Assembly: GCF_021028975.2 (NCBI RefSeq)
Contig: NC_059429.1
Coordinates: 67,270,001 to 67,334,000 of the forward strand
Reading direction: 5' to 3'
Source of the DNA: Sphaerodactylus townsendi
Lineage: Eukaryota
DNA: 64,000 bases
Shown: one piece after another, positions 16,611 through 64,000 of the stretch
Layout: the number at the start of each line of letters is the position of its first letter
Position numbering within the stretch: the stretch's first letter is position 1
The notes under the pieces: generated by a model
Seen by the model: the letters and a program-made list of their open reading frames with translations, nothing else
The model's database searches: none
What the model was told of the DNA's origin: nothing
Made by a program: the position numbers and the translations under genes

Positions 16611-17065
16611 GTGTTCTGGGTCGTGTTCACTAGCCCTTTGCCGGCTTACTGAACACCACCCAGACAAAGGATGTCTCCAGGCAGTAAGTAGTCAAAGGGC
16701 TAGTGAACACCATCCAGAACACCACCCACCACTCTAGGCAGTAAGCAATCAAAGGGATCAAAAGGCCAGGCTACTACAATGCAGATGCCCTCACTAATTG
16801 ATTATGCTATCTTCATAGTTACTCACATGGTAAATGGGTGGATCCCACCCAAAACATGCAAATCAAGCTTGCTAATTGCACCCTTTACACTTGTTAACAG
16901 GCAATTGGCTCTTCCTCCCACCCTGGACATTCCACAGGTATATATACTCCACTTGCTTCACTACCATCAGATCATCTAAAGATGCCAGCCACAGATGCAG
17001 GCAAAACGTCAAGAGAAAATGCTACTAGAACACGGCCATGCAGCCCGGAAACCACACAACACTCC
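16611..17065 (+). mobile_element. Penelope-like element 3' fragment with 5' inversion and a degenerate hammerhead
   Basis: Inverted repeat 16611-16650 vs 16682-16722; GATGCCAGCCACAGATGCAGGC...GGCCATGCAGCCCGGAAACC is shared with copies at 45.9, 54.1 and 62.2 kb. Confidence 0.75.
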
Positions 17066-17330: not shown

Positions 17331-18063
17331 TGAGCCTTGTGGGGAAGGGTGGGATACAAATTGAATAAATAAATAAATATTTTCCCAATTGGTTTTTAAA
17401 GTGCATCTATCAGCAAACTCTATAGCCCGCTTTGATTAAATATCACTAGAATTGATAAGGGTAGGTCAGATAAAATTGTTGGGAGGGACACAGCTAACAG
17501 GAGACCATTTGGACATCCTTGTTCTATGTTTAAACTAGAATGAAGTATCTAATTTCAACCTGTGCTTCTTACCTGCAGATATTTAAATCCACAGATAGGA
17601 GGCACACTCACCCCAAACAGAGGTTTCTTCAAACTTGGGTTACTCCTCAAGTTGGCAAAAAAATCTGAAAACTTTAAGAAAACGGTAGGTTTTTAATTCT
17701 CCTGGTGGGGGCAGAAAGGTGGGGGCACAAAGAGGAAGAGACTGCTGGAGTGGTGGAACAGAAAGAGAAAGGAGAGGGTGGGGTAAGGAGGCAGAAAGAA
17801 GAGAGCTGTGGTAGGTGGGCAGAAAGATAAGAGAGTTGGGGTAGGGGAGAGCAAGAGAGAACGAAAATAGGTGGGTAGAAAGAGAGGGAAGAATAAAAGG
17901 AACGGTAGGATAGAGTGGGCAGTAGAGAAGAAGGGGAACAGAAGAAAAAAACTGGGAGTAATTTCCACTCCCCGCAAGTTTTCTTCAGGTTCTTACTTGT
18001 TTCATGGGACTGCTGTGTATATCTAAAAACAAAGCTTTCAGAAAATGGTTTATATTGATTTAC

Positions 18064-18177
18064 CTCTTCAATTCCAGCGATATTGTTTACTGCCAACTTT
18101 TTGAGGGAACTTTGAAGTTTTTTGTCATCTGCTGTTGCTGTTCTATGAACTACCTTCTTCTTTCTACGAGCTGTACC
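18064..18177 (-). CDS. BTF3L4: BTF3L4 coding exon 2 ([38 protein letters not shown])
   Basis: ctcag acceptor, GTAAAT donor, phase 0/0; contains the RRKKK ribosome-binding motif of NAC-beta. Confidence 0.98.
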
Positions 18178-19082
18178 CTGAGACATACAACAAGAGAAAA
18201 ATTAGCATCACTTCTAGATGAAGTAAGTCTGTCCCATCAATTTTCCAAAAACAGTCTCAGTCCTGTGAAATTTTACAGATAAATGTAATTATTGTGGTAT
18301 GTGATTCTGCACCAACAATTGTTTCTAATACAGCACAATGAGATGAAGTAAAGGCAGAGCAGGGAACTCCAGGTAATAACAGCTGCTGACTGATAGCTGC
18401 TGATAGGGTGGCTTCTGATAGGGTGGCTTCATTCTACCACGAGTTCCATGTGGGAGAATACAGGCCAAGTGAAAATGCATGATCACACACGTCAATGTAT
18501 ATACAGCTGTTAGGACCAGATACACTACCAGCTCCATTTTTGTCACCTATTTTGCAAGCAGACATGGAAATGTGAGACTGAAGAGGGATTGCTTTAAATT
18601 ATTATAATACATTGTATTTATTTATTTTTTAAAATTACAGCTCATCTTTCCTCTAAAATAGCCTTCATGACAGTTTACAAATCCACACATCTTTAAAAGA
18701 TGAACAGTATATTTAAACAATACCACAAGGGAAAAATCACCCAGATAAATATCACTTACCATTAAAAGACCAGGGGAAAAATGGCATTAGGTTGCCTTTA
18801 CAAGATACTAACGATGGTTCCAGGCATACCTCCCTCGACCAGAGCATCACCACAGGAAATGCCACTCTGACTTCTCTAACCTCCAAAATCACCCCCATTC
18901 CTGTAGAAGGCTCTCAGATTATGATCTAAAATGGGACATTTACTGTGACTATGCTGAGTATAGGCATGCCTGCATCAGAATGGACAGTATGCTGTTGAAA
19001 ACAGTATTGTTCATCAAAACTTGCAACTATGGAAGGTAATGCCTCTTCATGAATGCAAAATAATATATCCTTCTATTCATAC

Positions 19083-27925: not shown

Positions 27926-28702
27926 ATGCCGCTGATCGTGCTATGTGGGCTGCCGGGGAGCGGCAAGAGCAGGCGAGCTGAAGAGCTGCGGGAAGCGCTG
28001 AGTGCCGAGAGCGGTGGCGAACGGCGGGTGTTCCTGGTGGCTGAAGTTGCGGCCGGGGAAGGCGGTGGCGGCGGCAGGGCTGCGTTGCGGGCGGAGGCCG
28101 AGCGGCTGCTGAGCCGACGGGACGTGGTGATCGTGGACGCGGGCAACGAGCTGAAGAGCTTCCGCTATGAGCTGTACTGCCTTAGCAAGCACACGGGGAC
28201 CCCGCATTGCCTCCTGCTGTGCCCCGGCGGCGCTCCCCGCCCCGACCGGCCTCCCTTGGAGGCGCCGGACTCGCGCAACCGCTGGGACTGGCCTCTCTTC
28301 ACCGCTCCCGAAGACCCCTCGGAGCCGCTGCCCCTGCCGGAGATCCGCGCCGCCCTCTTTGAGCGCCGCCCGCCGCCCCCCAACCAGTCCACGCGTTCCC
28401 AGCCCCTCCAAGCCGCTGGGTTTCTCCACCAGCTCGACCGCCTCACTCAGGACATGGTGGCCGCCCTCATGGCCGCGCAGAGGAATGGCGTAGGGCCCGG
28501 CCAGGTCATCCCATTGGCCGTCGAGGGCCTGGGCCAAGAACCTCCGGGGTTGCTGCTGAGCCGGGCTGTCAGCCTCGCCGAACTAAGCCGGCTCCGTAGA
28601 CAGTTCCTCAGCTATGCCAAGATGCATCCTGGAGAAGGAGAAGAAAATCTGCCCCAGCTGGGCAGCATGTTCGTACAGTACTTGAACAGCAACCTGCTGT
28701 GA
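27926..28702 (+). CDS. KTI12: KTI12 homolog (Elongator cofactor, PSTK-like P-loop ATPase), single exon, 258 aa, nested in TXNDC12 intron 2
   Basis: MPLIVLCGLPGSGKS P-loop, FRYELYC, EAPDSRNRWD.PLF, FLHQLD, ELSRLRRQF.SY.KMHP and MFVQYL motifs. The true ATG is at 27926; the ORF track starts 10 codons upstream at a non-ATG codon. Confidence 0.96.
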   Translation: MPLIVLCGLPGSGKSRRAEELREALSAESGGERRVFLVAEVAAGEGGGGGRAALRAEAERLLSRRDVVIVDAGNELKSFRYELYCLSKHTGTPHCLLLCPGGAPRPDRPPLEAPDSRNRWDWPLFTAPEDPSEPLPLPEIRAALFERRPPPPNQSTRSQPLQAAGFLHQLDRLTQDMVAALMAAQRNGVGPGQVIPLAVEGLGQEPPGLLLSRAVSLAELSRLRRQFLSYAKMHPGEGEENLPQLGSMFVQYLNSNLL

Positions 28703-32573: not shown

Positions 32574-35500
32574 GGCCCGGCCGTCCTTCTGGTGGTCTCT
32601 GCATTTTAATTTCTGTCTCTCTGCCAGCAAAAATTCTATCAACCCCCTCCCACTTAATTCAAGCATTGCTGATTAATTGGGGCAAATCATCACTGATATT
32701 CATTAATACGTATATCCGCCCTGGTGCGAATAATAACGTTCGTGATGACCCGTGGCAGAATTTATCCTCGTTTGTTGAGGAGCTAGAACTAAAATATCCT
32801 TCAACTGAAATTACTATATTGGGGGATTTCAATGCGAGAGTGGGTAATAATCTAACCTCATATTTGGAACGTGAAGGTTATGATGATAACGATTATGTCT
32901 ATTCACTCTTACTTCCATCAGAGCGTCATTCTGAGGATACCCAGACCAATTACACTGCTAGGAATCTGATCGAATTTGCTATCAAACATAACATGTTATG
33001 GCTCAATGGTCTAAAATGCTACGACTGTTCTAATAATTTCACATTTGTTAGTACGCTGGGGAACAGTGTTATAGATTATTGTTTTATGTCACCAAAATTA
33101 AGAACTTCAGTCCAGTCTTTTAAGATAGGAGACCTTCTACTAGGAGATCACCTCTCACTTAACCTTGTTCTCCATCAGGAAGAGGGGGTGGACGTTCCTA
33201 TGGATACATCTAAAGAGTATTTACCTACGCTTTTCTGGACATCCCATTTGGCCCTTACCGCCAATGAGCTAATTAATTCTCAGCATCTAGGTAATCTCTT
33301 AAGTGCTTTTTATAAGGCAGGTTCGCCTTGTGTGGCAATTGGCAATTTTGAAACATTAATCAAGTATATCACAGACTATCTTGTAAAGTCCGTTAAGCAG
33401 AAACCTCCATTCAGCACTAGAGGTGCCCCCTGGTTTGACAAAGAGTGCCATGAATTAAACAAACTAATTCGTGCATCTTACCAACAGTTCAAGAGATTTA
33501 GAAATCCTGTGTCGCGCAATCAGCTAGTTCAATATAAAACTACTCTTCATTCTTTAATGAAAGAGAAACAGGTCCAGTATGCGCAGAATCAGTGGGATCG
33601 CTTATATCAAGCTGTAATCTCCAATGACTCAAGACAGTTTTGGGCCTTGACAAACAGACTTGACTCCAATAAAATGAGGGCGTTTTCTTCTATTCTCCCT
33701 GAGGTTTGGATAGATCATTTTGCGAAGCTGTTCCAAAAGGAAGAGACCAGTAACATTTATCATCCATCTCCATCATTAGATGATTCCAAATGGCCTCCTG
33801 TTTTAACTCAGGAAATCATGGATCTAATAACTGGGTTGAAACCCCGTAAAGCTTCTGTTGATATACTCCATTTCCCCAGAGATACTGAAGTGGCATAGAG
33901 GGTGGTGGGCACCGCTGTGGGCCCATCTATTCTCGCAGGTCAATGACTCAGGCCGCATTCCTAAGCCGGGGCTAGCGGCAGTCATTGTACCTATTTATAA
34001 AAAAGGTGACCCGCTGGATCCTGTCAACTTCCACCCAATTAATGGTTGACATCAGTCATTGGGAAAATATATGCTAAGACACTTCTGCCCAAACTACAGG
34101 CCTGGGCGATTCATCCAGAACATCATTGGCCCAGAGCAAATAGGCTGCACGAGGGGGAAATCCACGGTAGCCCATGCGTATGCTTCTTACGCATCCTGGT
34201 TAATAAATGCTCAAAGAGGAGTCCAAGAAGCAGAGCTTTATGCCTGCCTTCATGGATTTGAAGGCAGCTTTTATTTGTGACAGTCTCTAGAGAATGTCTT
34301 TGGAATAAATTGGCTATACAAGGAATAGAACCAGTAAACTTCTTTTTCTAATCAGGCAGCTTTAGATACTTAAACTGCAGAGTTGTGCTCACGTGAAAGG
34401 ATCATGACTGATTCTATTTCTACCTTTAAAGGTGTAGAGGCAAGGCTGTGTGTTAGCTTTCAACCCTTTTCAATTTATTTTTTGAGTGACCTTCCATCAG
34501 CCTTGTTAGAAATTAATAACCAATGCCCCTAAGTTAGGCTCAAGGCATATTCCAATACTTCTATATGCTTTGATGATACCATCCTTCTATCTCGCATCAA
34601 AAGTTGGACTTAATTAGGCTGCTGAATAGATGTGGGCAATTGCTGTGCGGATATGGTTAGTCATCAATTATCAAAAGACCAAGATTTTGATCTTTGCCAA
34701 ACAATACAAGAAACATAACTGAAGCGATTAATAAAGAGTGCCAGTGGGTGGAGGTTAACCAATACAAATATCTTGGAATTACATTTTCTTATAACCTCTC
34801 CTGGTGCCCACAAAAAAAAGCTGCTATTGCAGCTGCTGCCATCAGATTATTCACCCGTGCCATTGCACGCTTCTTTTATGGAAAGGGGCACTCCCTTGTC
34901 CCAGCAGCACTAAAAATCTTTAACTCTAAGATAGAAGCGCAGTTACTTTGTAAGATTACCTATCCTGGCTCCAAGCAGTTGACGACTCCTTGAATACTGT
35001 CCAATCCAAATTTTTCATTAAAATTATGGGCCTGCCAAATTATGTATTATCGCGGCCCTCTGTTTCTAGAACTGGGCCAAAATTCATTAGTTTATTGGGC
35101 TTGGATTTGCGAGGCTTTTAAATTTTGGCTTCACCTGCATTTCTAGCGCAGTGATGAGCACTTTTCGCTGACTCACCTACTTTTGTCTGATACTCCAGGC
35201 TAATCCATGGTTCTCTCTGATCGAAAGAAAGGTTGAATCACTTGGTATATCTCTAGAGCTACCGCTTTTCCCGCTATCTAGTTCCAATCCTACAACTTGT
35301 TAAAACAAAAATTGTTAGAAAGCGAATGGCGTAATTTATTTAGGGCTGCTATGAAAACTTGTTCACCCTTACATCTTTCAATACTACCCTATATATCAAA
35401 ACAGGATGGCTCCCTATTTGTATTTTTTGACTAATTCAGTGATACGCAGAGAAGAGCCCTCACACTTGCTCGCTTCGGTATTTTCCCCTCCGGCTTTATT

Positions 35501-36481: not shown

Positions 36482-36661
36482 NNNNNNNNNNNNNNNNNNN
36501 NNNNNNNNNNNNNNNNNNNNNNNNNNNNNNNNNNNNNNNNNNNNNNNNNNNNNNNNNNNNNNNNNNNNNNNNNNNNNNNNNNNNNNNNNNNNNNNNNNNN
36601 NNNNNNNNNNNNNNNNNNNNNNNNNNNNNNNNNNNNNNNNNNNNNNNNNNNNNNNNNNNNN
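36482..36661. other. Assembly gap (N run)
   Basis: 180 N. Confidence 1.
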
Positions 36662-45884: not shown

Positions 45885-46121
45885 TGTGTTGTCGAAGGCT
45901 TTCATGGCCGGATTCAACTGGTTGTGGTGGGTTTTTCTGGGCTGTGTGGCTGTGGTCTGGTAGATCTTGTTCTTAACGTTTCGCCTGCATCTGTGGCTGG
46001 CATCTTCAGAGGTGTATCACAGAGAGAAGTCTGTTAGTGTACCTCTGAAGATGCCAGCCACAGATGCAGTATAGATCTGTTCCACAGGCTCGCTGTCAAG
46101 ACAAATCTGAACCACAACCAG
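45885..46121 (-). mobile_element. Penelope-like fold-back insertion with hammerhead core
   Basis: 12-bp TSD TTTATTTTAGAA (45873-84 / 46122-33); inverted partial duplication; hammerhead-like core on minus strand 45971-46013. Confidence 0.85.
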
Positions 46122-46478
46122 TTTATTTTAGAAATTGGTAATTTTTGCCTCTGAAATACGGGAGGAGGAAGAACTTGGAGAGGGTTTTTTTGGCTTTCTC
46201 CTACCTAGTACCATGCAAGGTCTAGAAATGCAAGGGTCCAGGTGAATTTCATTCAGAATCTAAAATACCAATACAGAATGGGACAGTTTCTTTTTGCTTT
46301 GTTCTAAAGGGCATTTTGAATTAAATGGGTTACATGTGTAAAAAGACCAAGCTTTCCTGTTTTAATTCAAAGGTGATGTAAAGACTCAGCAAGTTGTTAC
46401 CTCCAGTATCTTATATTAATCATCTCTCTGCAAAAGTATATACTTTCATAACAAATGGGAAAACATAATGAATTATGT

Positions 46479-46575
46479 ATTGTCGAAGGCTTTCATGGCC
46501 GGATTCAACTGGTTCTGGTGGGTTTTCCAGGCTGTGTGACCAGACCACAGCCACACAGCCCAGAAAACCCACCAG
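46479..46575 (-). mobile_element. Very short Penelope-like fold-back insertion lacking the hammerhead core
   Basis: Direct flanks AACATAATGAATTATGT (46462-78 / 46576-92); same terminus TTGTCGAAGGCTTTCATGGCCGGATTCAACTGG as 45889; internal inverted repeat. Confidence 0.85.
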
Positions 46576-49002
46576 AACATAATGAATTATGTTTACTTTT
46601 AATTTAGAGTATGGTCCTTTGCTTTGCTTTATACAGTTATTCTATTAAAATGTACACCAGAAGTGCTAATTGTGAAGATATTTGCTGATTCTTGAATTTT
46701 CTACGTGAACGAATCAACTGGTTTAATTTTTGAAAACGCAAATTATTTTAATACTCTGTCTTCATTATTTTGAATGGGACTTTTGATTTTGGCTGATCTG
46801 TGGTATATTGGACAGTAGCTCATAATGTGTAGACTTTAACTTTGTGTGAAATAAATAAGGGTTTTGTGTGTTGCATAATAGGAAATAATGAATGGAAAGA
46901 GCAAGATATGCTAGAGAGAGCATTGTGTGGGTATGCTAAACATTAATGCAGCACTAATGTTGAACGATGTTTCCACATGAAGCGATTGTAGATATTATGG
47001 AGCATCATAGGATTACTATACTAATTTTTTTAAGAATAACAAGTTACTTGGAACTGGGAAGACTGTTTTGGGAAGCCACTGGGTCCTGAAATGAAGGACA
47101 AATTTGAACTGACTGTCAGTGATCAGTTGGCAGTCAGTGATCATGATTTAATATGCTTCTCTGAATACACAGATATACACTGAATTCTCAGATAGTAGCC
47201 ACCCAGAATTGCCCACTTTAATCAATAAAATAAAGGATAACTGGCAAGCTTTGTGAATAGGTTCTATTACTATTGCACCAAAGCAGCTTTTGCAAAATGC
47301 AGAAACTAAATTTACAGCCAGGAAATCCAGGTTACAGTTTCAGAATATATTATAATGAAAAATGATGCAAATGAGACAGATTTGTTGGTTAGGTACTATG
47401 CTAAGCAAGCAACTGATTTGCATGTATACAATGAGGATTTCGTTGTAGGGGCTGAGCAGTGAGAGAACAGGGACACAGTGAGCAATAGAAGCCTTGGAGC
47501 ATTTCAAATATAGAGGCACTTCTGACGGGGAGGGGAATAATGGAGGAGCATTGACCTGGGTCAATAACAACCACTGAGCTCCAGATTAGTCTGGTAATGT
47601 TCTGTAGACAAAAATTCATTCTGATTCTTTGGACATTGACAAATTTTTCCTAGAGGCCATAAATGCAATATAAATGCATGTTTTAAAAATCTTTGGTAAG
47701 AGAAACCAAGCTTTACTGGTAGACAAATTGTTTTTAGAGTTGAAAGAAAGATGATTTGAAGGAGCACAGTTTGTTTTAGCTTTTCTTCAGATTTTAACCC
47801 TTATTTTGTAATATGTTGACTGATTTTCCCATAATTTCCTGTAAAGTGTGATAGACTAAGAAACAGACAAAATGATAACAATGGACTGTTGATATTTCAA
47901 TCTTTTGTTGGGCTTCTTATTTTGTTTTCATTAATAATCCATTTTAAGGTAGTTTGAAATACATAAACATTCAGCCCAACCCAATCTGTCTCATCTGCTA
48001 AAATCTTGTTGTGTATAAAATCATCAGCATATCAGCTTTGCATCAAACGATCTCTCAGTGCACACACTTAAAAGTAACAGTACTTCGAATACTTCTCAGT
48101 AAAGTATTTCTATGATGAATTATCGCAGTGATGGATTTTGCCATTATTAATTACGAAATATAACAGGCTTCCTGTTCTACAGCATACTTAAAGGCACCAG
48201 CTTTAAAGTCTAGATACACCCCCTCAAATTTAAAACTGTTTATAATCAGAGCATTTCGTAGCACCACACAACTTGTATTTCAACTGCATTGATTAAAAAC
48301 ATATACCATCAGCAGACTATGGGATCAGAAAATACCTTGTTTTCAGAATTGCTTATATGTTTGTGACAGATGTGAAACATTGACATTGATACAGTTGGAA
48401 AGAGGGCAGCTGCTGAAAGTTTATTCTTTCCGCCTCTCTTTTCTGATGCTCCAGAACAAGAACTGCAGAGATTTGGTTGAGGTTGGAGCATTGCCATACT
48501 GGAGAGCAAGACAGCAAGGGTGGGTTATAAACAGTTACTGAGACTGAAGTCTATTTAGGCACCTTGTGCCGTGTAACTCATGTTCTGGTGAACAGCACTA
48601 TTACTACATGTCTCTCCTCAGTAACTGATTTTTAATATCAATCTTCAATACAAATTCATTAATCTTATGGATGTACAGGCATCTGATGAAGAGTTATGAT
48701 TCATTGAAACCTACTCTGGAATAAATGTTGGTCACCAAAATTGCCACTGGATGCCTGCTTACAGGTCTGTTTACCCCCTTACTCCAAAAGTAGTGTATGA
48801 GTTTTCCCCTTATGTTCTGTCCATTTTCATTTGCCTATATCTTAGCTTCCACAGGGGACTCGGCAATAGATTGTTTAAAATGCATTTGATAATGCATATG
48901 TCACCTTTCCGCCATTGTTTTGAAAATGGTTTACAATTCAAAAGAATGCCTTTAACATACAACACCTAATAAAGAAAAGGATAGAAAATGAAGAAGATAG
49001 CA

Positions 49003-53028: not shown

Positions 53029-54053
53029 AGCCTAAGGATGAGCATCAGAGAAGAACCTGGAGAGAGCCTGTGTTGCTTGGTGCGGGGTGGAGAAAGGCTG
53101 GAAAAACTATGTGCCAGTATCTCAGTTTGTATAACTGGAAGCAGTTAGATCAAAACAAACAAACAAAAAACAGAAGTTATATTATGGGCTAGACATGAAG
53201 ACCCTGGGTATGGGTATGGCTTTGGGCTTCTAGTTCATTATCCCTATTGTGTTCCATACATGATTCCACAAAAGGCAATTAGGAGACATGTTGACTGGCT
53301 GAGATGCAAGGCTGAGTTGGCTGAGCAGCAGAAACAAGGCATCCTGCCACATCCTTTGGATCCCTGAGTGAGATGATGTTTTGTCATTAAAGATCTTCCC
53401 ATAGGCTTTGGCAATATTGGTATCCTTTGTCATTCCAGACAAAATATCTTTGCATTTTTATTGAATTAAGTTAGTCCCAAAGCATCAGAAATGCAAATTA
53501 GTCTGATAGGGCTGACAGTGGTGACCTTCCACCAAGGCAGCTTGTTGTGCAATAGCTTCCATCATGTCTTTTATGAATAACCAAGGGTAGATTCAAATGT
53601 GCAGAAAGAGCATATGGTACAGTGCTTCCTGGAATGTACTTCTGCAGACTGTGGGTGAGGGTCACATGTTGAAATATTTGGCCATGTTTGAGGAGGAAAA
53701 ATAGCTTTCTGTTTGCAGGATGCTAGCATATCAGGGATTGACCTAAGCTGAAACCTTCTTGCAAGGCTAGTGTCTTTGTAGTTAAGGAGTTAATTATGAA
53801 ATATGCAGTTCCATGCTGTTTGCTGTTTGTGCAAAGCCAGAATGCATCTAGAATTCATAATTAGCACAAAAAAACTGTGGACATCTGCCATGTATGATTA
53901 GGTAAATTATATTGTCAGATTTGGGTTCAGAAAACATCTGCCTGGGCTTGGACAAAGTCATGGCTAAGACCGAATAAGAAATTTTGGTTGGGAAAGCATT
54001 TTTGCTCACACTTACAATCTTTTGCCTTCAAGAAGTAATTTATAATACAGACT

Positions 54054-54262
54054 TGGGTGCTGTGTGGTTTCCGGGCTGTATGGCCGTGTTCTAGCAGCAT
54101 TCTCTCCTGACGTTTCGCCTGCATCTGTGGCTGGCATCTTCAGAGGATCATTCTTCAGATCCTCTGAAGATGCCAGGCACAGATGCAGGCGAAATCTGCC
54201 ATTCTGTTCTAGCATCTGAAACAGCTCTACCTGTGATTCGACACGATGAAAGCCTTCGACAA
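54054..54262. mobile_element. Penelope-like fold-back insertion with two head-to-head hammerhead cores
   Basis: 13-bp TSD TATAATACAGACT (54041-53 / 54263-75); inverted duplication centred at about 54153. Confidence 0.88.
54105..54147 (-). ncRNA. Minimal type I hammerhead ribozyme, consensus-intact
   Basis: UCCU-CUGAAGA-U-GCC(a)GC-cacagau-GC(a)GGC-GAAA-C-GUC^-AGGA: helix I UCCU/AGGA, helix II GCC/GGC, palindromic ACGU helix III, GUC cleavage triplet. Confidence 0.8.
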
Positions 54263-55788
54263 TATAATACAGACTGTAAATGGCAACTAATCCAATTTTG
54301 TAATCAAGTTTGTCTAGTAAACCTAACAAAGCTGGAAGTCCTCTCTATTTCAAAATGCTCTGGATCTGTAATAAATTCCAAAGATTTTGGTTTTTTAAAT
54401 AAATACAATAATCTTTTCTTGCTTATAAGAAACTCCCTGTTCCTCTAATTCTAGGCATATAGACAAAACTTTGTCAATACTTGACAAAACTTGTCGAGCG
54501 TATAGACAAAACTTGTCAAAACTATTAAAGAATCTATTCAGAGTGTATGTAGAACCCGCATTTTCATTGGGTGTTCTATACCAGAACCAAACTGCATTCA
54601 AAGAATCCTTCTAATTAATAAAACCCGACACAGCTGGTTGCATAGCTTGTGCATGTGTGTGTTTCGACATTCATTGCACACAACGGTTTTTCGAGATGGC
54701 CAGTAGATGGTGTGTATTTAGACACTCACTGCACACAACAGTTTTTTGAGATGATTGTAAGGAACAGGTTTTTTTCATATTAGGTTAACCAAATTCCCCT
54801 AGGTGTGAGGATGGAGCATAATACTTGGATGCTGGCACTTTGCAGCCAAAGTGAAGTGTTGAAAAAGATAATTCCTTCAGTAAAGAAGGACGATCTCAAG
54901 GAAATCAAAACCCTTGAAGCATGTCAGTCTCTTTAGTATGGCTGCTGAGACCTTGGTTGATTCCCCAAGGTCAATTTATTATGTGATACTCAAACGAAAA
55001 AACATGGCTTAAGCAAGAACTCCCCACCGCTTAAGTGCCCAACACGGATTCATCCAGGTTCTGGCACGCGTTCCCCCCATCCTGCATTTTTTCAGAACTT
55101 GCATTGAAGTGCACCTTTTTTCCAATCACGCTCCGAAGCTGGATCAGTGGGGAGAAACAGGAGACAGACGTGGCTTATTGTTTCCGCCCTTCAAACCTTC
55201 AGCCAATCAGAGCGCAGAGCGCAGCCTTTTTTTGTTTGCTGGGCATGGCTATGAAGGAACATAAATACAAAACTACAAAACAATGATTTTGATAAATTGT
55301 TTATGCGTGGCTACATTCAAACATAGAAACAAGAAGAAGAATAACATGAATTTTCATTCATGGATGGAGTAGTGTTCCCGCTCCAGCACAATAGCCAATC
55401 AGAAGGTGGGGAAATTCTGCCTATGCATCTACGTAGTGAAATAGCTGCATGAAAAAAAGTGTTTTAAAAAGTTCCCACCTCAAAACAACAGCCAATCAGG
55501 ACGAGGAACAACAGATCCGCCGAGCAAATCATGTGTTCGTGGGGAGTGTTACATTGTTTGAAACTGCGATAGACATCAAGGTCTTCACTAGACACCTGCT
55601 ACAGTGGGGAGGGAGAAACCGTGATGAAAAAGGTGCTATTTCTTTTGGAACTGGGATGTATCTGGCTTAATTTCTCAGTAGGGATTCTACCCTTGATGAC
55701 TGTTTCCTGCATAACTCTGCAGAAACTTCCACATTCTGCAAAAGTATTCCAAGAAGGCAAAATCCTGAGGTCATATAACAGAAGCAGT

Positions 55789-56741: not shown

Positions 56742-57004
56742 NNNNNNNNNNNNNNNNNNNNNNNNNNNNNNNNNNNNNNNNNNNNNNNNNNNNNNNNNNN
56801 NNNNNNNNNNNNNNNNNNNNNNNNNNNNNNNNNNNNNNNNNNNNNNNNNNNNNNNNNNNNNNNNNNNNNNNNNNNNNNNNNNNNNNNNNNNNNNNNNNNN
56901 NNNNNNNNNNNNNNNNNNNNNNNNNNNNNNNNNNNNNNNNNNNNNNNNNNNNNNNNNNNNNNNNNNNNNNNNNNNNNNNNNNNNNNNNNNNNNNNNNNNN
57001 NNNN
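56742..57004. other. Assembly gap (N run), followed by a reverse SINE fragment 57005-57120
   Basis: 263 N. Confidence 1.
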
Positions 57005-59950: not shown

Positions 59951-62143
59951 CCACCCACTCTAGCGGAGGGAGGGGAGGGGTGGCATGCAAGGGAGGAGAG
60001 GGAGGGGCCCCGGCATCGGGACATGGCCCACCCACCCTAGCAGAGGGAGGGGGAGAGGAGGGATTGAGGGGTGGCATGCAAGGGAGGGGCGGGAGGAGTA
60101 TATACTCTGAATATGGAAGCAGAAGCTGTGGTCTCATGACCTTTATATGACCATAAATGTATAGGACCATTGGAGTTATTTGTGTCTTAATTCTGTGCAC
60201 TGGTTGTGGGTAACTTACAATGAACTGTTTTACTGTGAGGGTGCTTTATCTGCTATTCAACCTCTCACAGTAGAGTTTAGCATCTGGTGTAAGGTCCCTT
60301 TTAAGGTTATAACCTCACAATGAAGATCTATTGATTCTGGCACATGGCATGAGTACAGGTATGAAACATGTGTAACATATACATGCATATACTTTGCATT
60401 GCAAAACATCCTATGGATGCACAAACACTAATGAGCTATGTTTTATTATTTCAGTTGAATTTACATCTATGTACTTATATACTCTAGAGCAAAGAACTGT
60501 TTCCACTCTCTAACTTTAGTTTAAACATTTATGGTTCCAACCATGTTATGCTTCCATGCATCTATGATGCTTTTTGTACAGTTGGTTGGTAGCATTATTA
60601 CCTTATTAAATAGTCCTGTTCTTTGTTTACATTGTTATATTACTACTGTTATGGATTATTGGTTTTATGATTAGGTTACTAAAAGGGCATAGTGCTTTTT
60701 CCTAAGGAAAAATATACAGGCAAAGAACCTTGCCCTAACCATTTAGAGTCAAACTGACAGAGTAAATGGGGAAAGGCTATATTGTCAAGAACTAATGAAT
60801 TTTGCCTTGGGGAATGGTACAAGGAACAAATTGAGAATAAGTGCCAGAATTAAATTGGTTAGGTAATTGGCAGGATCGTTTTTAATAGCAAACATTATTC
60901 TCAGTCACACTGAGGTTTCTCAGATTAGTCTCCTGTAAGTCATTTTGACTGTACTTAAGATCTCTACGACCAAAACTACTGTGGAGAAAAATTCTTTCTC
61001 TTTGTATCAACTTGACCAGAAGAGTTGTATAATTTAATCTTAGGCCCTTTATGCATGCAGAATCCACCCCAAGGCTGTTTGCTCTGTAGTGGGATTTTCC
61101 AGTGTTTTTTCGTTTACACAGTATTCTTGCTGAGCTGTGCCACCATTTTCTCACTCCCCCCTTCCCACGCTTCTTTGTTGTTTCTGCAACTTCCATTTTT
61201 TTCTGGATTTGGAAACCTTGCAGAGAATCTGATCTGAAGCATGGTGAGTTCTGAAATGTATAACAATCTAACTGATGCTCTTAAGATACCTATGCTTTTG
61301 AACAACATGGATCCCACAGTGTGTGAGAATGTAGCAAAATTTCTGCTAACAATAATAGACGTAAGTCTAGATGAATACCAACCAATGTCTATGTATTATG
61401 ACCACATATAGCCAGCAGTAATTTTTCTAGCTTCTGTCAGTATCCGATGACGTTTAAGTGAGTTAACTTAGCTGAAGGAATGTCCTATAGTTACAGAAGG
61501 ACCATGTATATATTTTAGTATTTAGTATTTTAGTACCAGTGTCTATAATTGTGAGCAATAATGGGCAAATTTTGTATGCTGATTTTGTATGTTTATTTTA
61601 TGCCAATAAAGGCTTGTGACTGAGTTCTGAAATGTGCATAACTGAGAATCTAACCTGAAAGGAATGTATGCTGAACTCGAAGGAGACCACGAGTGCGTAA
61701 ACGGCCTTAGAGAACTTTGCAAAACATAACAATAGAACCATTTTGGTGCTTGACTTATAAGATGTGACAGAATCTCCCCTCACTGAAAGTGTCACAAGGA
61801 AAGTTTCTCCTCCACCCAGGGTTCTCACTTAAGTAGACATATGTCATTTTAGTCACTGTTCAGGAAATTATACAACACTTAACACAATCTGGAAGCCAAG
61901 TGGCTCCATCTAATCTTGGTACAGTGAAGGTTCCCCTCTTTGTAAAATGTTAAGACAATTCTAGTAAATTCTAATGATGAAACCTCCCCACCCAACCATA
62001 CAAGCACCTAATGTAGGCAGATTGATTATCTCTAAAATGTGCTCAATATTCATAACCAGTCTTAGAATGAATGTGGTATACCATTATTAACTAAAAACAG
62101 CACACTCTGTTTCTAAGGTAGTTTATCTGGAAATTATAGTATT

Positions 62144-62308
62144 GGGGTGTTGTGGAGTTTCCAGGCTGTGTGGCCAGAGGATCCTCTGAAGATGCCAGCC
62201 ACAGATGCAGGTGAAACGTCAGGAGAAACTGCTACTGGAACACGGCCATACAGTCCGGAAACCCTACAGCTTCCCGGTGATTCCAGCCGTGAAAGCCTTC
62301 GACAATAC
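62144..62308 (+). mobile_element. Penelope-like insertion with 5' inversion and hammerhead core
   Basis: 12-bp TSD AATTATAGTATT (62132-43 / 62309-20); 62144-75 is an inverted copy of 62244-75; terminus GAAAGCCTTCGACAATAC. Confidence 0.88.
62182..62224 (+). ncRNA. Minimal type I hammerhead ribozyme, core intact with a G-U pair closing helix II
   Basis: TCCT-CTGAAGA(62186-92)-T-GCC...GGT-GAAA(62213-16)-CGTC^AGGA; predicted cleavage after 62220. Confidence 0.7.
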
Positions 62309-62704
62309 AATTATAGTATTTTTTAAAACACGTATACATCACTGCTAAATCTAGGAATAAGGAGCCAACTTTGTCTATATAAATGTCTTTTCAGAGAACA
62401 ACTGTGCTCAAACAGGTTTTCATTTAGAGAAAACAATGCATTGTTGTATCCACTTACTGAGTCCAACAAAAAAAGTACTGAGCTGGCACTTGGTCTATTC
62501 GACTTCTGCATTTGCTAGCAATATGTTTAATTCTCAGCCCTGTCAAATCTGTGAATATTTAAATCCAGAGACTGGAGGCATGAATAGAAAAGGCAATGCT
62601 ATGTACTGTTCTGGTCACCACATCTCAAAAAACAAAAAAGGCAAAGCTGGAAAAAGTACTGAAGAGGGTAACCAAGATGATTGCAAGATGGTTGGAGCAT
62701 GTTG

Positions 62705-64000
62705 CCTATCCCACGGTATTAAAAGAACTGGCAGAAGTCCTCTGAGAACCACTTGCTATAATCTTTGAGAACTCCTGGAGAACAGGAGAACTCCCAATGG
62801 AGGGCTAATGTTATCCCCATTTTCAAAAAGGGGAAAAATGAGGACCCTAATAATTAATGTCCAGTCAGCCTGACATCAATACCAGGGAATATTCTGGAGC
62901 AGATCATTAGACAGACAGTCTGCCAGCACTTGGAAGGGAATACTGTGATCACAAAAAGTCAGCATGGGTTTCTGAAAAACAAGTCATGCCAGACCAATCG
63001 TATCTCTTTTTTTGATAAAGTGACAAGCTTGGTAGACTAAGGGAATGCTGTGGACGTAGCATACCTGGATTTTAGTAAAGTTTTTGACAAGGTGCTCCAT
63101 AATATTCTCGCAAGTAAACTAGTGAAATGTGGACTAGACAATGCTACTATTAGATGGATTTCTAATTGGTTGTCTGATCGAACTCAAAGGGTGCTAATTA
63201 ATGGCTCATCTTCATCCTGGAAAGAAGTGACTAGTGGGGTGCCACAGGGTTCTGTCCTGGGCCCAATGCTATTCAATATTTTTATCAACGACTTGGATAA
63301 TGGAATAGAGGGCATGCTAATAAAATTTGCAGATGACACCAAATTAGGAGGGGTAGCTAATACCCCAGAGGACAGAGTCAGAATTCAAAATGACCTAGAC
63401 AGATTAGACAGCTGGGCCAAAACAAACAAAATGAGTTTCAACAGAGATAAATTTAAGATACTACACTTAGGCAGAAAAAATGAAATGCACAGATATAGGA
63501 TAGGTGACACCTGGCTTGACAACACTACATGCAAAAGGGATCTGGGAGTCTTAGTTGACCATAAACTAAATATGAGTCAGCAGCGTGATGCGGTGGCCAA
63601 GAAAGCCGATGCGATTCTGGGTTGTATCAATAGAAGTATAGTGTCAAGATCGAGGGATGTAATTGTACCTCTCTATTCTGCATTGGTTAAACCTCACCTG
63701 GAATAATGTGTACAGTTCTGGACACCACAGTTCAGGAGGGATATAGACCGGTTGGAGTGGGTCCAGAGGAGGGCAACCAAAATGGTAAAGGGTCTGGAGT
63801 CTCTACAAAGAGAGGCTTAGGGAGCTGGGGATGTTTAGTCTGGAGAAGTGTAGGTTAAGGGGTGACATGATAGCCATGTTTAAATATTTGAAGGGATGTC
63901 ATGTCGAAGAGGGAGCAAGCTTGTTTTCTGCTGCCTCAGAGACTAGGACACGGAGTAATGGATTCAAGGTGAAGGAAAAGAGATTCCACCTAAACATTAG
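62705..64000 (+). mobile_element. CR1 LINE ORF2 (RT), 5'-truncated, runs off the window edge
   Basis: ORF 63050..63706 with YLDFSK.FDKV, SGVPQGSVLGP.LFNIFINDL, KFADDTKL, RDLGVLVD, LYSALVKPHLE; in-frame stops on both sides. Confidence 0.95.

What the first reader, a model, noticed from the sequence alone, without database searches (positions are those of the whole stretch)
54054..54262. TSD-flanked fold-back mini-retroelement carrying an intact minimal hammerhead ribozyme and its inverted twin
Seen: the minus strand of 54105-54147 reads UCCU CUGAAGA U GCC..GGC GAAA C GUC AGGA. That supplies every hammerhead core nucleotide, helix I, helix II and a helix III reduced to the palindrome ACGU. A second copy lies head-to-head on plus (54160-54194) but loses the cleavage triplet after GAAA. 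The 209-bp unit sits between 13-bp direct repeats. Established: Penelope-like retroelements carry minimal type I hammerheads whose palindromic helix III favours dimeric cleavage. Inference: this is a recent non-autonomous insertion. A read-through transcript would fold the two copies against each other, which could silence the ribozyme.
Basis: partly seen in the sequence, partly recalled or inferred. Interest (0 to 1): 0.8.

Follow-up and report, generated by a model that had tools for sequence, protein, structure and literature searches.

The report
Penelope retrotransposon stub carrying hammerhead
This 209-base insert in a gecko genome is an ordinary dead, two-armed stub of a Poseidon/Penelope-like retrotransposon; its hammerhead ribozyme motif is real but is the one already described and tested for this element type in the green anole.

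Summary
The minus strand of 54105-54147 carries a complete minimal type I hammerhead. A head-to-head twin (54160-54194, +) stops after GAAA. The 209-bp unit lies between perfect 13-bp direct repeats.

It is not a new ribozyme device. The motif has the same layout as the hammerhead of Poseidon_Ac (PAc), the Penelope-like element of Anolis carolinensis that Frangieh et al. 2024 tested in vitro. In both, the element's ATG starts at A9 and the cut falls 26 nt after the ATG.

The two outer ends sit at the two published internal reverse-transcription start sites: about +85 without the "tail", and +114-116 with it. An inverted 5'-truncated copy with a tail at one end only is a published hallmark of Penelope-like insertions (Craig et al. 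2021). Three further two-armed stubs in this window share the plan.

The genome is Sphaerodactylus townsendi. A read-through transcript is predicted to form a -70 kcal/mol hairpin that buries the ribozyme.

Follow-ups of this scan reached the same verdict on four other pieces of this genome. No reads, empty site or genome-wide copies could be examined.

Known kind, low interest.

The parts
54041..54053 (.). Left target-site duplication TATAATACAGACT
   Evidence: 13/13 identical to 54263-54275. AT-rich, as published for PAc target sites.
54054..54149 (-). Arm A: 5'-truncated, tail-less Poseidon-type stub. The sense strand is the window minus strand, and it covers about -12 to +85 relative to the element's ATG.
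   Evidence: A 33-nt piece of the published Poseidon_Ac consensus matches 54087-54119 (-) with 2 mismatches. The translation from the ATG is 64% identical to the PAc N-terminus over 28 aa, E=1e-12. The outer end aligns with the tail-less ends of the other copies.
54105..54147 (-). Complete minimal type I hammerhead. The predicted cut lies between 54109 and 54108.
   Evidence: Read directly from the sequence. Descriptor scan against simulated sequence. Same layout as the experimentally tested PAc hammerhead.
54135..54137 (-). ATG of the PLE ORF stub; its A is hammerhead position A9
   Evidence: There are 26 nt from the end of the ATG to the cut, as stated for PAc. An open frame of 28 codons runs to the end of the arm.
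54150..54157 (.). 8-nt spacer between the arms. Its right half may still belong to arm B.
54158..54262 (+). Arm B: 5'-truncated, tail-bearing Poseidon-type stub. The sense strand is the window plus strand, and it runs from about -15 to +114/116.
   Evidence: It ends in CGATGAAAGCCTTCGACAA, one mismatch from Poseidon_Ac positions 96-114. Aligned with the other tail arms.
54160..54194 (+). Truncated hammerhead twin: helix I 5' strand, CUGAAGA, U, helix II and GAAA, but no CGUC cleavage site and no helix I 3' strand
   Evidence: It is 36/37 complementary to arm A.
54195..54232 (+). Middle of arm B that does not align with the usual family sequence. About 36 nt that would include the cleavage site are replaced by about 19 nt.
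   Evidence: unexplained
54233..54262 (+). 30-nt 'tail', present on this arm only
   Evidence: The published tail spans about +85 to +119 of PAc and is often present at one end only. Position.
54263..54275 (.). Right target-site duplication TATAATACAGACT

Best explanation
The unit 54054-54262 is one dead-on-arrival insertion of a Poseidon-type Penelope-like retrotransposon in the gecko Sphaerodactylus townsendi. It consists of two heavily 5'-truncated copies of the pLTR/ORF junction placed head to head, with their 3' ends facing outward, inside a 13-bp target-site duplication. Each outer end is a reverse-transcription start site of the element: about +85 (no tail) on the left and +114-116 (with the 30-nt tail) on the right. 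The hammerhead is the element's own ribozyme, which overlaps the start of its ORF, so any insertion that reaches back past +1 carries it. Arm A keeps all of it. Arm B lost the cleavage site.

Shown here: the anatomy, the homology to PAc, and the end positions.

Inferred: the element's endonuclease cut both target strands with a 13-nt stagger, and each 3'-OH primed a cDNA, as PAc does in vitro. The two cDNAs were then joined near a GATC palindrome 12-15 nt upstream of the ATG, possibly with a short snap-back copy that produced the near-perfect 37-bp inverted repeat.

The stub has no ORF and no second cleavage site, so it cannot move or release a unit-length RNA. In any read-through RNA of either strand the 37-bp hairpin should out-compete the hammerhead fold. 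Its most likely present function is none.
For: 1. Same layout as the published PAc hammerhead: CUGANGA, extra U, a 6-position stem II, GAAACGUC^AGGAG, ATG at A9-U-G, and the cut 26 nt after the ATG.
2. Published consensus pieces match arm A with 2 mismatches in 33 nt and the arm B end with 1 in 19. The N-terminal peptide is 64% identical, E=1e-12.
3. The published tail spans about +85 to +119 and RT starts at +111-118. In this window all five tail-less arm ends align at about +85 and all four tail ends at +114 to +118.
4. PAc protein cleaves and extends both DNA strands in vitro.
5. Craig et al. 2021 describe an inverted 5'-truncated copy next to the main copy, with the tail at one end only, as typical of PLEs.
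6. All four two-armed stubs in the window (45886-46125, 46478-46577, 54054-54262, 62143-62309) have one tail end, one tail-less end and their own AT-rich TSD of 10-15 bp.
7. [quoted passage not shown]
8. Folding: the hairpin is -70.5 to -72.7 kcal/mol, and hammerhead pairs have probability ~0 in the full transcript.
Against:
- No repeat library (Dfam/Repbase) was available. Assignment rests on about 130 nt of homology to one published consensus, at roughly 80-94% identity depending on the segment.
- No full-length element of this gecko family was seen in the window.
- The middle of arm B (54195-54232) does not align with the family and is unexplained.
- Arms of one insertion are near-identical only over -12 to +25 and unlike each other beyond that. 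A simple two-cDNA model does not predict this.
- In vitro, Frangieh et al. saw no difference in start-site choice between strands. Here 4 of 4 two-armed stubs pair one tail end with one tail-less end.
Confidence: 0.9

Rival explanations
1. A distinct non-autonomous mobile family (a fold-back 'mini-retroelement' or a retrozyme-like element) that is itself copied and spread by the PLE machinery and uses its hammerhead for processing.
For: Several short units with the same general plan occur within 17 kb. Animal non-LTR retrozymes are proposed to derive from PLE pLTRs.
Against: The units differ in length (about 100-240 bp), in inversion point and in arm content, as independent truncations would. 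Arms of one unit are not copies of each other: the 62k arms are 24/33 identical although the TSD is intact. There are no direct tandem repeats and only one cleavage site per unit, so no unit-length RNA can be excised or circularised. Only 2 of the 6 hammerhead-bearing arms are intact.
Confidence: 0.05
2. The insertion has been taken over by the host as a hairpin RNA source (miRNA/siRNA-like) or as a cis-acting ribozyme in a host transcript.
For: A 37-bp near-perfect hairpin gives sub-threshold matches to miRNA precursor models, the best at 50 bits. The neighbouring KTI12 gene and the thioredoxin-domain gene around it lie on the plus strand.
Against: All miRNA matches are far below the gathering scores (50 against 100) and only reflect hairpin shape. 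The intact hammerhead is on the minus strand, opposite to the known neighbouring genes. Sister copies decay freely: G5A and G12A in the 17k copy, C17U and a broken helix I in the 45.9k copy. There is no conservation or expression evidence.
Confidence: 0.03
3. A chance motif, or a cut-and-paste fold-back/MITE DNA transposon.
For: Internal inverted repeat plus TSD.
Against: The descriptor is expected 0.007 times per window. There is clear homology to a published retroelement. The outer ends are not inverted repeats of each other, because the tail is on one side only. TSD length varies from 10 to 15 bp among copies, unlike a transposase family.
Confidence: 0.01

Closest known systems
Poseidon_Ac (PAc), Penelope/Poseidon-clade PLE of Anolis carolinensis, and its hammerhead (Frangieh et al. 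2024, PMC11167929; Repbase consensus in their File S1)
   Same: Hammerhead layout: core, extra U, GAAACGUC^AGGAG, ATG at A9, cut 26 nt after the ATG. Homologous first ~114 nt of the ORF. 3' ends at about +85 and +111-119 (the tail). AT-rich targets.
   Different: The host is a gecko, not an anole. Sequence differs: N7 is A instead of G. Stem II is GCCAGC/GCAGGC with an A-A mismatch, against GCCUGC/GUGGGC with two G-U pairs. Helix I is 4 bp against 3 bp. The N-terminal peptide is 64% identical. Here only a 209-bp stub is present, with no ORF.
Minimal hammerheads of metazoan PLEs (Cervera and de la Pena 2014, PMC4209133; the dimer-cleaving variants of Lunse et al. 2017 are cited from memory)
   Same: Type I topology, no helix III hairpin, palindromic 15.2-16.2 (ACGU) that can pair in trans, unpaired nucleotide after A9, G10.1-C11.1, short helix I, long helix II, location at the pLTR/ORF junction.
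   Different: Nothing essential. That paper lists turtles and snakes among reptiles, not geckos.
Complex tandem/inverted PLE insertions with a one-sided tail (Craig et al. 2021, PMC8557442)
   Same: An inverted 5'-truncated copy abutting the main copy, a 30-40 bp tail at one end only, strong 5' truncation.
   Different: Here both copies are cut down to about 100 nt, so the whole insertion is just the two end pieces.
Animal non-LTR retrozymes (tandem hammerhead repeats giving circular RNAs; Li et al. 2026 preprint, 10.64898/2026.07.22.740005)
   Same: PLE-derived sequence with a type I hammerhead.
   Different: Retrozymes are direct tandem repeats with a cleavage site in each unit. This unit is inverted and has a single cleavage site.
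Canonical type I hammerheads (Rfam hammerhead families)
   Same: All 13 core nucleotides and the helix order.
   Different: No helix III hairpin and no loop-loop contacts. No Rfam hammerhead model reports it at E<=10.

Membership tests
Hammerhead ribozyme (catalytic core) | C3 U4 G5 A6 N7 G8 A9 ... G12 A13 A14 ... A15.1-U16.1, H17 at the cleavage site | tested here: met
   CUGAAGA, GAAA, A15.1/U16.1 and C17 read at 54143-54109 (-).
Hammerhead ribozyme (catalytic core) | Self-cleavage at H17 | not testable with these tools
   Needs an in vitro assay. The homologous PAc motif cleaved only with the element's protein present, and C3G/G8C mutants behaved as expected.
PLE minimal hammerhead (Cervera and de la Pena 2014) | Unpaired nucleotide between A9 and G10.1 | tested here: met
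   U at 54136.
PLE minimal hammerhead (Cervera and de la Pena 2014) | G10.1-C11.1 pair closing a long helix II | tested here: met
   GCC-A-GC / GC-A-GGC: 5 pairs and one A-A mismatch, with a 7-nt loop. Helix II pairs A-U/C-G change on both sides between the gecko copies and metagenome variants (small sample).
PLE minimal hammerhead (Cervera and de la Pena 2014) | No helix III hairpin; palindromic 15.2-16.2 allowing a dimer | tested here: met
   A-CG-U is a 4-nt palindrome. The ACGU/ACGU duplex is -1.7 kcal/mol. Dimer cleavage itself was not tested.
PLE minimal hammerhead (Cervera and de la Pena 2014) | Short helix I (4-5 bp) | tested here: met
   UCCU/AGGA, 4 bp. Predicted occupancy is only about 0.02 in the isolated arm.
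Rfam hammerhead families | Score at or above the gathering threshold of a hammerhead covariance model | tested here: not met
   No hammerhead match at the gathering threshold or at E<=10, on the whole window, on 400 nt or on the isolated arm.
Penelope/Poseidon-clade PLE insertion | Homology to a PLE pLTR/ORF junction | tested here: met
   against the consensus.
Penelope/Poseidon-clade PLE insertion | 3' ends at the internal RT start sites; optional 30-40 bp tail, often at one end only | tested here: met
   Ends at about +85 and +114-116; 30-nt tail on arm B only.
Penelope/Poseidon-clade PLE insertion | Inverted or tandem 5'-truncated partner copy; variable TSD at an AT-rich target | tested here: met
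Penelope/Poseidon-clade PLE insertion | RT plus GIY-YIG ORF of the same family present in this genome | not tested
   No PLE ORF lies in the window. The RT fragment at 63050-63703 has the motif FADD and is LINE-like. The genome could not be searched.
Non-LTR retrozyme | Direct tandem repeats, each with a cleavage-competent hammerhead | tested here: not met
   Only an inverted pair and one cleavage site.

The most novel reading that the evidence does not exclude
These very short two-armed stubs may be natural end products that record the unresolved late steps of PLE integration. In 4 of 4 two-armed stubs here, one end starts at the tail site and the other at the tail-less site. Arms of one insertion come from different templates (24/33 identity inside an intact TSD). 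Three arms stop 12-15 nt upstream of the ATG at a GATC palindrome. This would point to coupled priming on both DNA strands by a two-RNA complex, with the cDNAs joined at a short palindrome and a limited snap-back copy. The long hairpin might then feed small-RNA silencing of the family.
Probability: 0.2. Interest if true: 0.45.

Novelty: already known. Interest (0 to 1): 0.15.

Why it matters
It matters little as a discovery. The ribozyme, its place at the start of the Poseidon ORF, the internal RT start sites, the tail and the inverted truncated partner copy are all published. The case is useful for annotation: mirror-image hammerhead motifs in this gecko genome should be masked as Penelope-like stubs and not read as ribozyme switches. 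It also shows that the PAc-type hammerhead and RT-start module is shared between a gecko and anoles. Minimal two-armed stubs could serve as a cheap genomic read-out of how PLE integration is completed.

Tried and rejected
No RNA, empty-site or polymorphism test was possible, read laying was not used, and I did not try another route.
- Rfam at the gathering threshold and at E<=10 gave no hammerhead. It gave only hairpin-shaped miRNA look-alikes far below threshold and a meaningless RydC match.
- A 47-nt piece of the PAc consensus had no match within 3 mismatches. Shorter pieces matched.
- A search for RAB-type P-loop and switch II exons found none in the window. The host-gene context of 54 kb (intron or intergenic) is therefore not established; only the plus-strand orientation of KTI12 and the thioredoxin-domain gene is.
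- The metagenome scan with the core pattern gave 15 contigs. About ten carry a same-layout minimal hammerhead. The two contigs checked (L004, L016) have no long ORFs nearby, and the origin of the contigs is unknown, so they serve only as weak comparative support.
- Unconstrained folding does not recover the hammerhead even for the isolated motif. This is usual for this ribozyme and fits the protein- or dimer-dependence reported for PLE hammerheads.
- A MITE or DNA-transposon reading and a chance motif were rejected.

Full report
**Observation**

On the minus strand, 54147 to 54105 reads UCCU CUGAAGA U GCCAGCCACAGAUGCAGGC GAAA CGUC AGGA.

- All hammerhead core nucleotides are present: C3-A9 at 54143-54137, G12-A14 at 54116-54114, A15.1/U16.1 and C17.
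- Helix I is 4 bp (UCCU/AGGA).
- Helix II is GCC-A-GC/GC-A-GGC with a 7-nt loop.
- Helix III is reduced to the palindrome ACGU.
- The predicted cut lies between 54109 and 54108.

The plus-strand twin (54160-54194) has the same 5' half and GAAA. It then continues with U instead of CGUC, so it has no cleavage site.

The repeat finder gives inverted arms 54113-54149 / 54158-54194 (37 nt, 97% complementary, 8-nt spacer). It also gives a perfect 13-bp direct repeat, TATAATACAGACT, at 54041-54053 and 54263-54275.

A full structural descriptor written in Python hits only this site and 62182-62224 (+) in the 64-kb window. The mean was 0.007 hits per simulated window.

No Rfam hammerhead model reports the motif at the gathering threshold or at E<=10, even on the isolated arm. 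The region gives only sub-threshold miRNA-precursor look-alikes, which reflect the hairpin.

**What it is**

A literature search led to Frangieh et al. 2024 (PMC11167929). They purified the protein of Poseidon_Ac (PAc), a Penelope-like element (PLE) of Anolis carolinensis, and tested its hammerhead.

Their supplementary consensus, read as a tandem, gives CUGAGGA U GCCUGCCAUAGAUGUGGGC GAAACGUC^AGGAG. The ORF's ATG begins at A9 and the cut falls 26 nt after the ATG. The gecko motif has exactly this layout (ATG at 54137-54135, minus strand).

Three sequence comparisons tie the unit to the published consensus:
- A 33-nt consensus piece matches 54087-54119 (-) with 2 mismatches.
- The 19-nt piece ending at consensus position 114 matches 54244-54262 (+) with 1 mismatch. 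It also matches three other places in the window, always at the edge of an insert.
- The 28 codons after the ATG are 64% identical to the PAc N-terminus, E=1e-12.

**The ends**

Frangieh et al. showed that reverse transcription starts inside the RNA, at +111-118 of the ORF. They also showed that the optional "tail" of genomic copies spans about +85 to +119, between two start sites.

In the present unit the right end (plus-strand sense) is at +114-116. It carries a 30-nt tail (54233-54262). The left end (minus-strand sense) is at about +85 and has no tail.

So the unit is two 5'-truncated copies of the pLTR/ORF junction. They lie head to head, with 3' ends outward, inside one target-site duplication.

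Craig et al. 2021 (PMC8557442) describe exactly this as typical of PLEs. They note strong 5' truncation, an inverted 5'-truncated copy abutting the main copy, and a 30-40-bp tail often present at only one end.

**Other copies in the window**

| Position | Plan | TSD | Hammerhead |
|---|---|---|---|
| 62143-62309 | two arms | about 10-11 bp | intact, plus strand |
| 45886-46125 | two arms | 12 bp | C17U, broken helix I |
| 46478-46577 | two arms | 15 bp | none (inverts downstream of it) |
| 16940-17064 | one arm, tail-less, runs into the pLTR | not examined | dead (G5A, G12A) |

All four two-armed units, including the one under study, pair one tail end with one tail-less end. Of the six hammerhead-bearing arms in the window, two are intact. 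The motif therefore decays after insertion, as neutral DNA does.

**Hammerhead class**

Cervera and de la Pena 2014 (PMC4209133) list the hallmarks of PLE minimal hammerheads:
- a G10.1-C11.1 pair;
- palindromic positions 15.2-16.2;
- a short helix I and a long helix II;
- low activity as monomers.

All the sequence hallmarks are met here.

A scan of public metagenome contigs with the core pattern, leaving helix II free, found 15 contigs. About ten carry the same layout with helix II GAAGG/CCUUC. Against the gecko GCC/GGC, two pairs change on both sides, and 86% of helix II cells pair. This sample is small and selected, the origin of the contigs is unknown, and the two contigs checked (L004, L016) have no long ORFs nearby. 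I use it only as weak support for what the literature already shows.

**How it most likely arose and what it does**

Shown: the anatomy and the end positions.

Inferred: the element's GIY-YIG endonuclease cut both strands of an AT-rich target with a 13-nt stagger, and both 3'-OH ends primed cDNA synthesis. PAc protein does cleave and extend both strands in vitro.

The arms of one insertion are not copies of each other:
- In the 62k unit they are 24/33 identical although the TSD is intact.
- In the present unit they are 36/37 identical only from -12 to +25 and cannot be aligned for the next ~35 nt.

This argues for two templates at the outer ends. The near-perfect inner repeat suggests an added snap-back or cross-copy step. 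Three arms of two independent insertions stop 12-15 nt upstream of the ATG at a GATC palindrome, which may be where the cDNAs were joined.

I give roughly equal weight to two models: pure two-ended priming, and two-ended priming plus a short snap-back. Neither can be settled here.

The stub has no ORF and a single cleavage site, so it cannot move or release a unit-length RNA.

ViennaRNA predictions:

| Structure | Result |
|---|---|
| Inverted repeat, either strand | -70.5 to -72.7 kcal/mol |
| Hammerhead pairing alone | -7.6 kcal/mol |
| Hammerhead pairs in a full-length transcript | probability ~0 |
| Helix I in the isolated arm | probability about 0.02 |

The low helix I value fits the protein-assisted cleavage reported for PAc.

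**Host and context**

The KTI12 protein encoded at 27926-28699 (+) matches exactly a gene on CM037618.2 of assembly GCA_021028975.2. A published paper names that assembly as Sphaerodactylus townsendi.

KTI12 lies inside a thioredoxin-domain gene on the plus strand. I found no RAB-type exons in the window. Whether 54 kb is intronic or intergenic is therefore open.

If a plus-strand host transcript covers the site, it would carry the truncated twin and the antisense of the intact motif, not the ribozyme itself. This is an inference.

**Age**

In favour of a fairly young insert:
- the TSD is intact;
- the inner arms differ at 1 of 37 positions;
- the unit keeps 8 CpGs, nearly half of the 17 in its kilobase.

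Against a firm date:
- the closest copies in the window differ from it by about 9%;
- no empty site could be checked.

"Recent" is therefore plausible but unproven.

**Earlier notes of this scan**

Four follow-ups on other pieces of the same genome reached the same verdict: Poseidon/Penelope-like stubs, a known layout. Two first-reader notes on this window describe the recurrent architecture and the 62k hammerhead. I confirmed the architecture and the 62k motif myself, but not its claimed gene context.

**What could not be done**

- No repeat library or eukaryotic genome search was available, so copy number, family structure and core-versus-flank conservation remain untested.
- The two N runs (36482-36661, 56742-57004) were left untouched.

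**Verdict**

This is a real feature, correctly read as a PLE hammerhead. It is an ordinary, already described kind of retrotransposon debris. Interest is low.

Noticed in passing
window 62143-62309: A second two-armed Poseidon-type stub. Its TSD is ATACTATAAT. The long tail arm on the plus strand carries an intact minimal hammerhead (62182-62224, helix II closed by G-U). The short tail-less arm is only 24/33 identical to the long arm, so the two arms came from different templates.
   Followed up: partly
window 45886-46125 and 46478-46577: Two more two-armed stubs, with TSDs TTTATTTTAGAA and ACATAATGAATTATG. Each has one tail end (+116/118) and one tail-less end (about +85). The first has a degenerate hammerhead (C17U, broken helix I). 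The second inverts downstream of the hammerhead and has none.
   Followed up: partly
window 16940-17064 (+): A single-armed, tail-less copy that runs back into pLTR sequence. Its hammerhead is dead (CUAAAGA; GGCAAAAC, a CpG-type change).
   Followed up: partly
window 54195-54232 (+): The middle of arm B does not align with the family. About 36 nt that include the cleavage site are replaced by about 19 nt containing TGTTCTAGCA, which also occurs in direct orientation at 54087-54096 on the other arm. It may be filler or a template switch at the junction; unexplained.
   Followed up: partly
window 54146-54161 and 62176-62186: Three arms of two independent insertions end 12-15 nt upstream of the element's ATG at a GATC palindrome. 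In the 62k copy the arms abut as GAGGATCCTC. This could be a preferred RNA 5' end, an RT stop, or a microhomology joint.
   Followed up: no
window 27926-28702 (+); L001: An intact single-exon KTI12 gene (Pfam KTI12, E=1e-52) lies inside a thioredoxin-domain (TXNDC12-like) gene on the same strand. An exact protein match places the window on CM037618.2 of GCA_021028975.2, Sphaerodactylus townsendi.
   Followed up: yes
window 17677-18186 (-): An ORF with a partial NAC domain (E=2e-6). It may be an exon of a BTF3-like gene, upstream of and divergent from the thioredoxin-domain gene. A CpG-rich stretch at 22-23 kb may be their shared promoter.
   Followed up: no
window 32666-33895 (+) and 63050-63703 (+): LINE fragments: an endonuclease-type domain (Exo_endo_phos_2) and an RT fragment with the motif FADD. 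Neither is PLE-derived.
   Followed up: partly
L002, L003, L004, L010, L012, L013, L016 (also L006, L008, L015): Metagenome contigs carry a repeat with a same-layout minimal hammerhead (CUGAAGA U GAAGG...CCUUC GAAACGUC AGGAG). L015 shows several tandem degenerate copies. They are probably host-animal PLE or retrozyme-like DNA within host-associated metagenomes; the origin was not established.
   Followed up: partly
window 36482-36661 and 56742-57004: Runs of N (gaps or masked). Left as they are.
   Followed up: no
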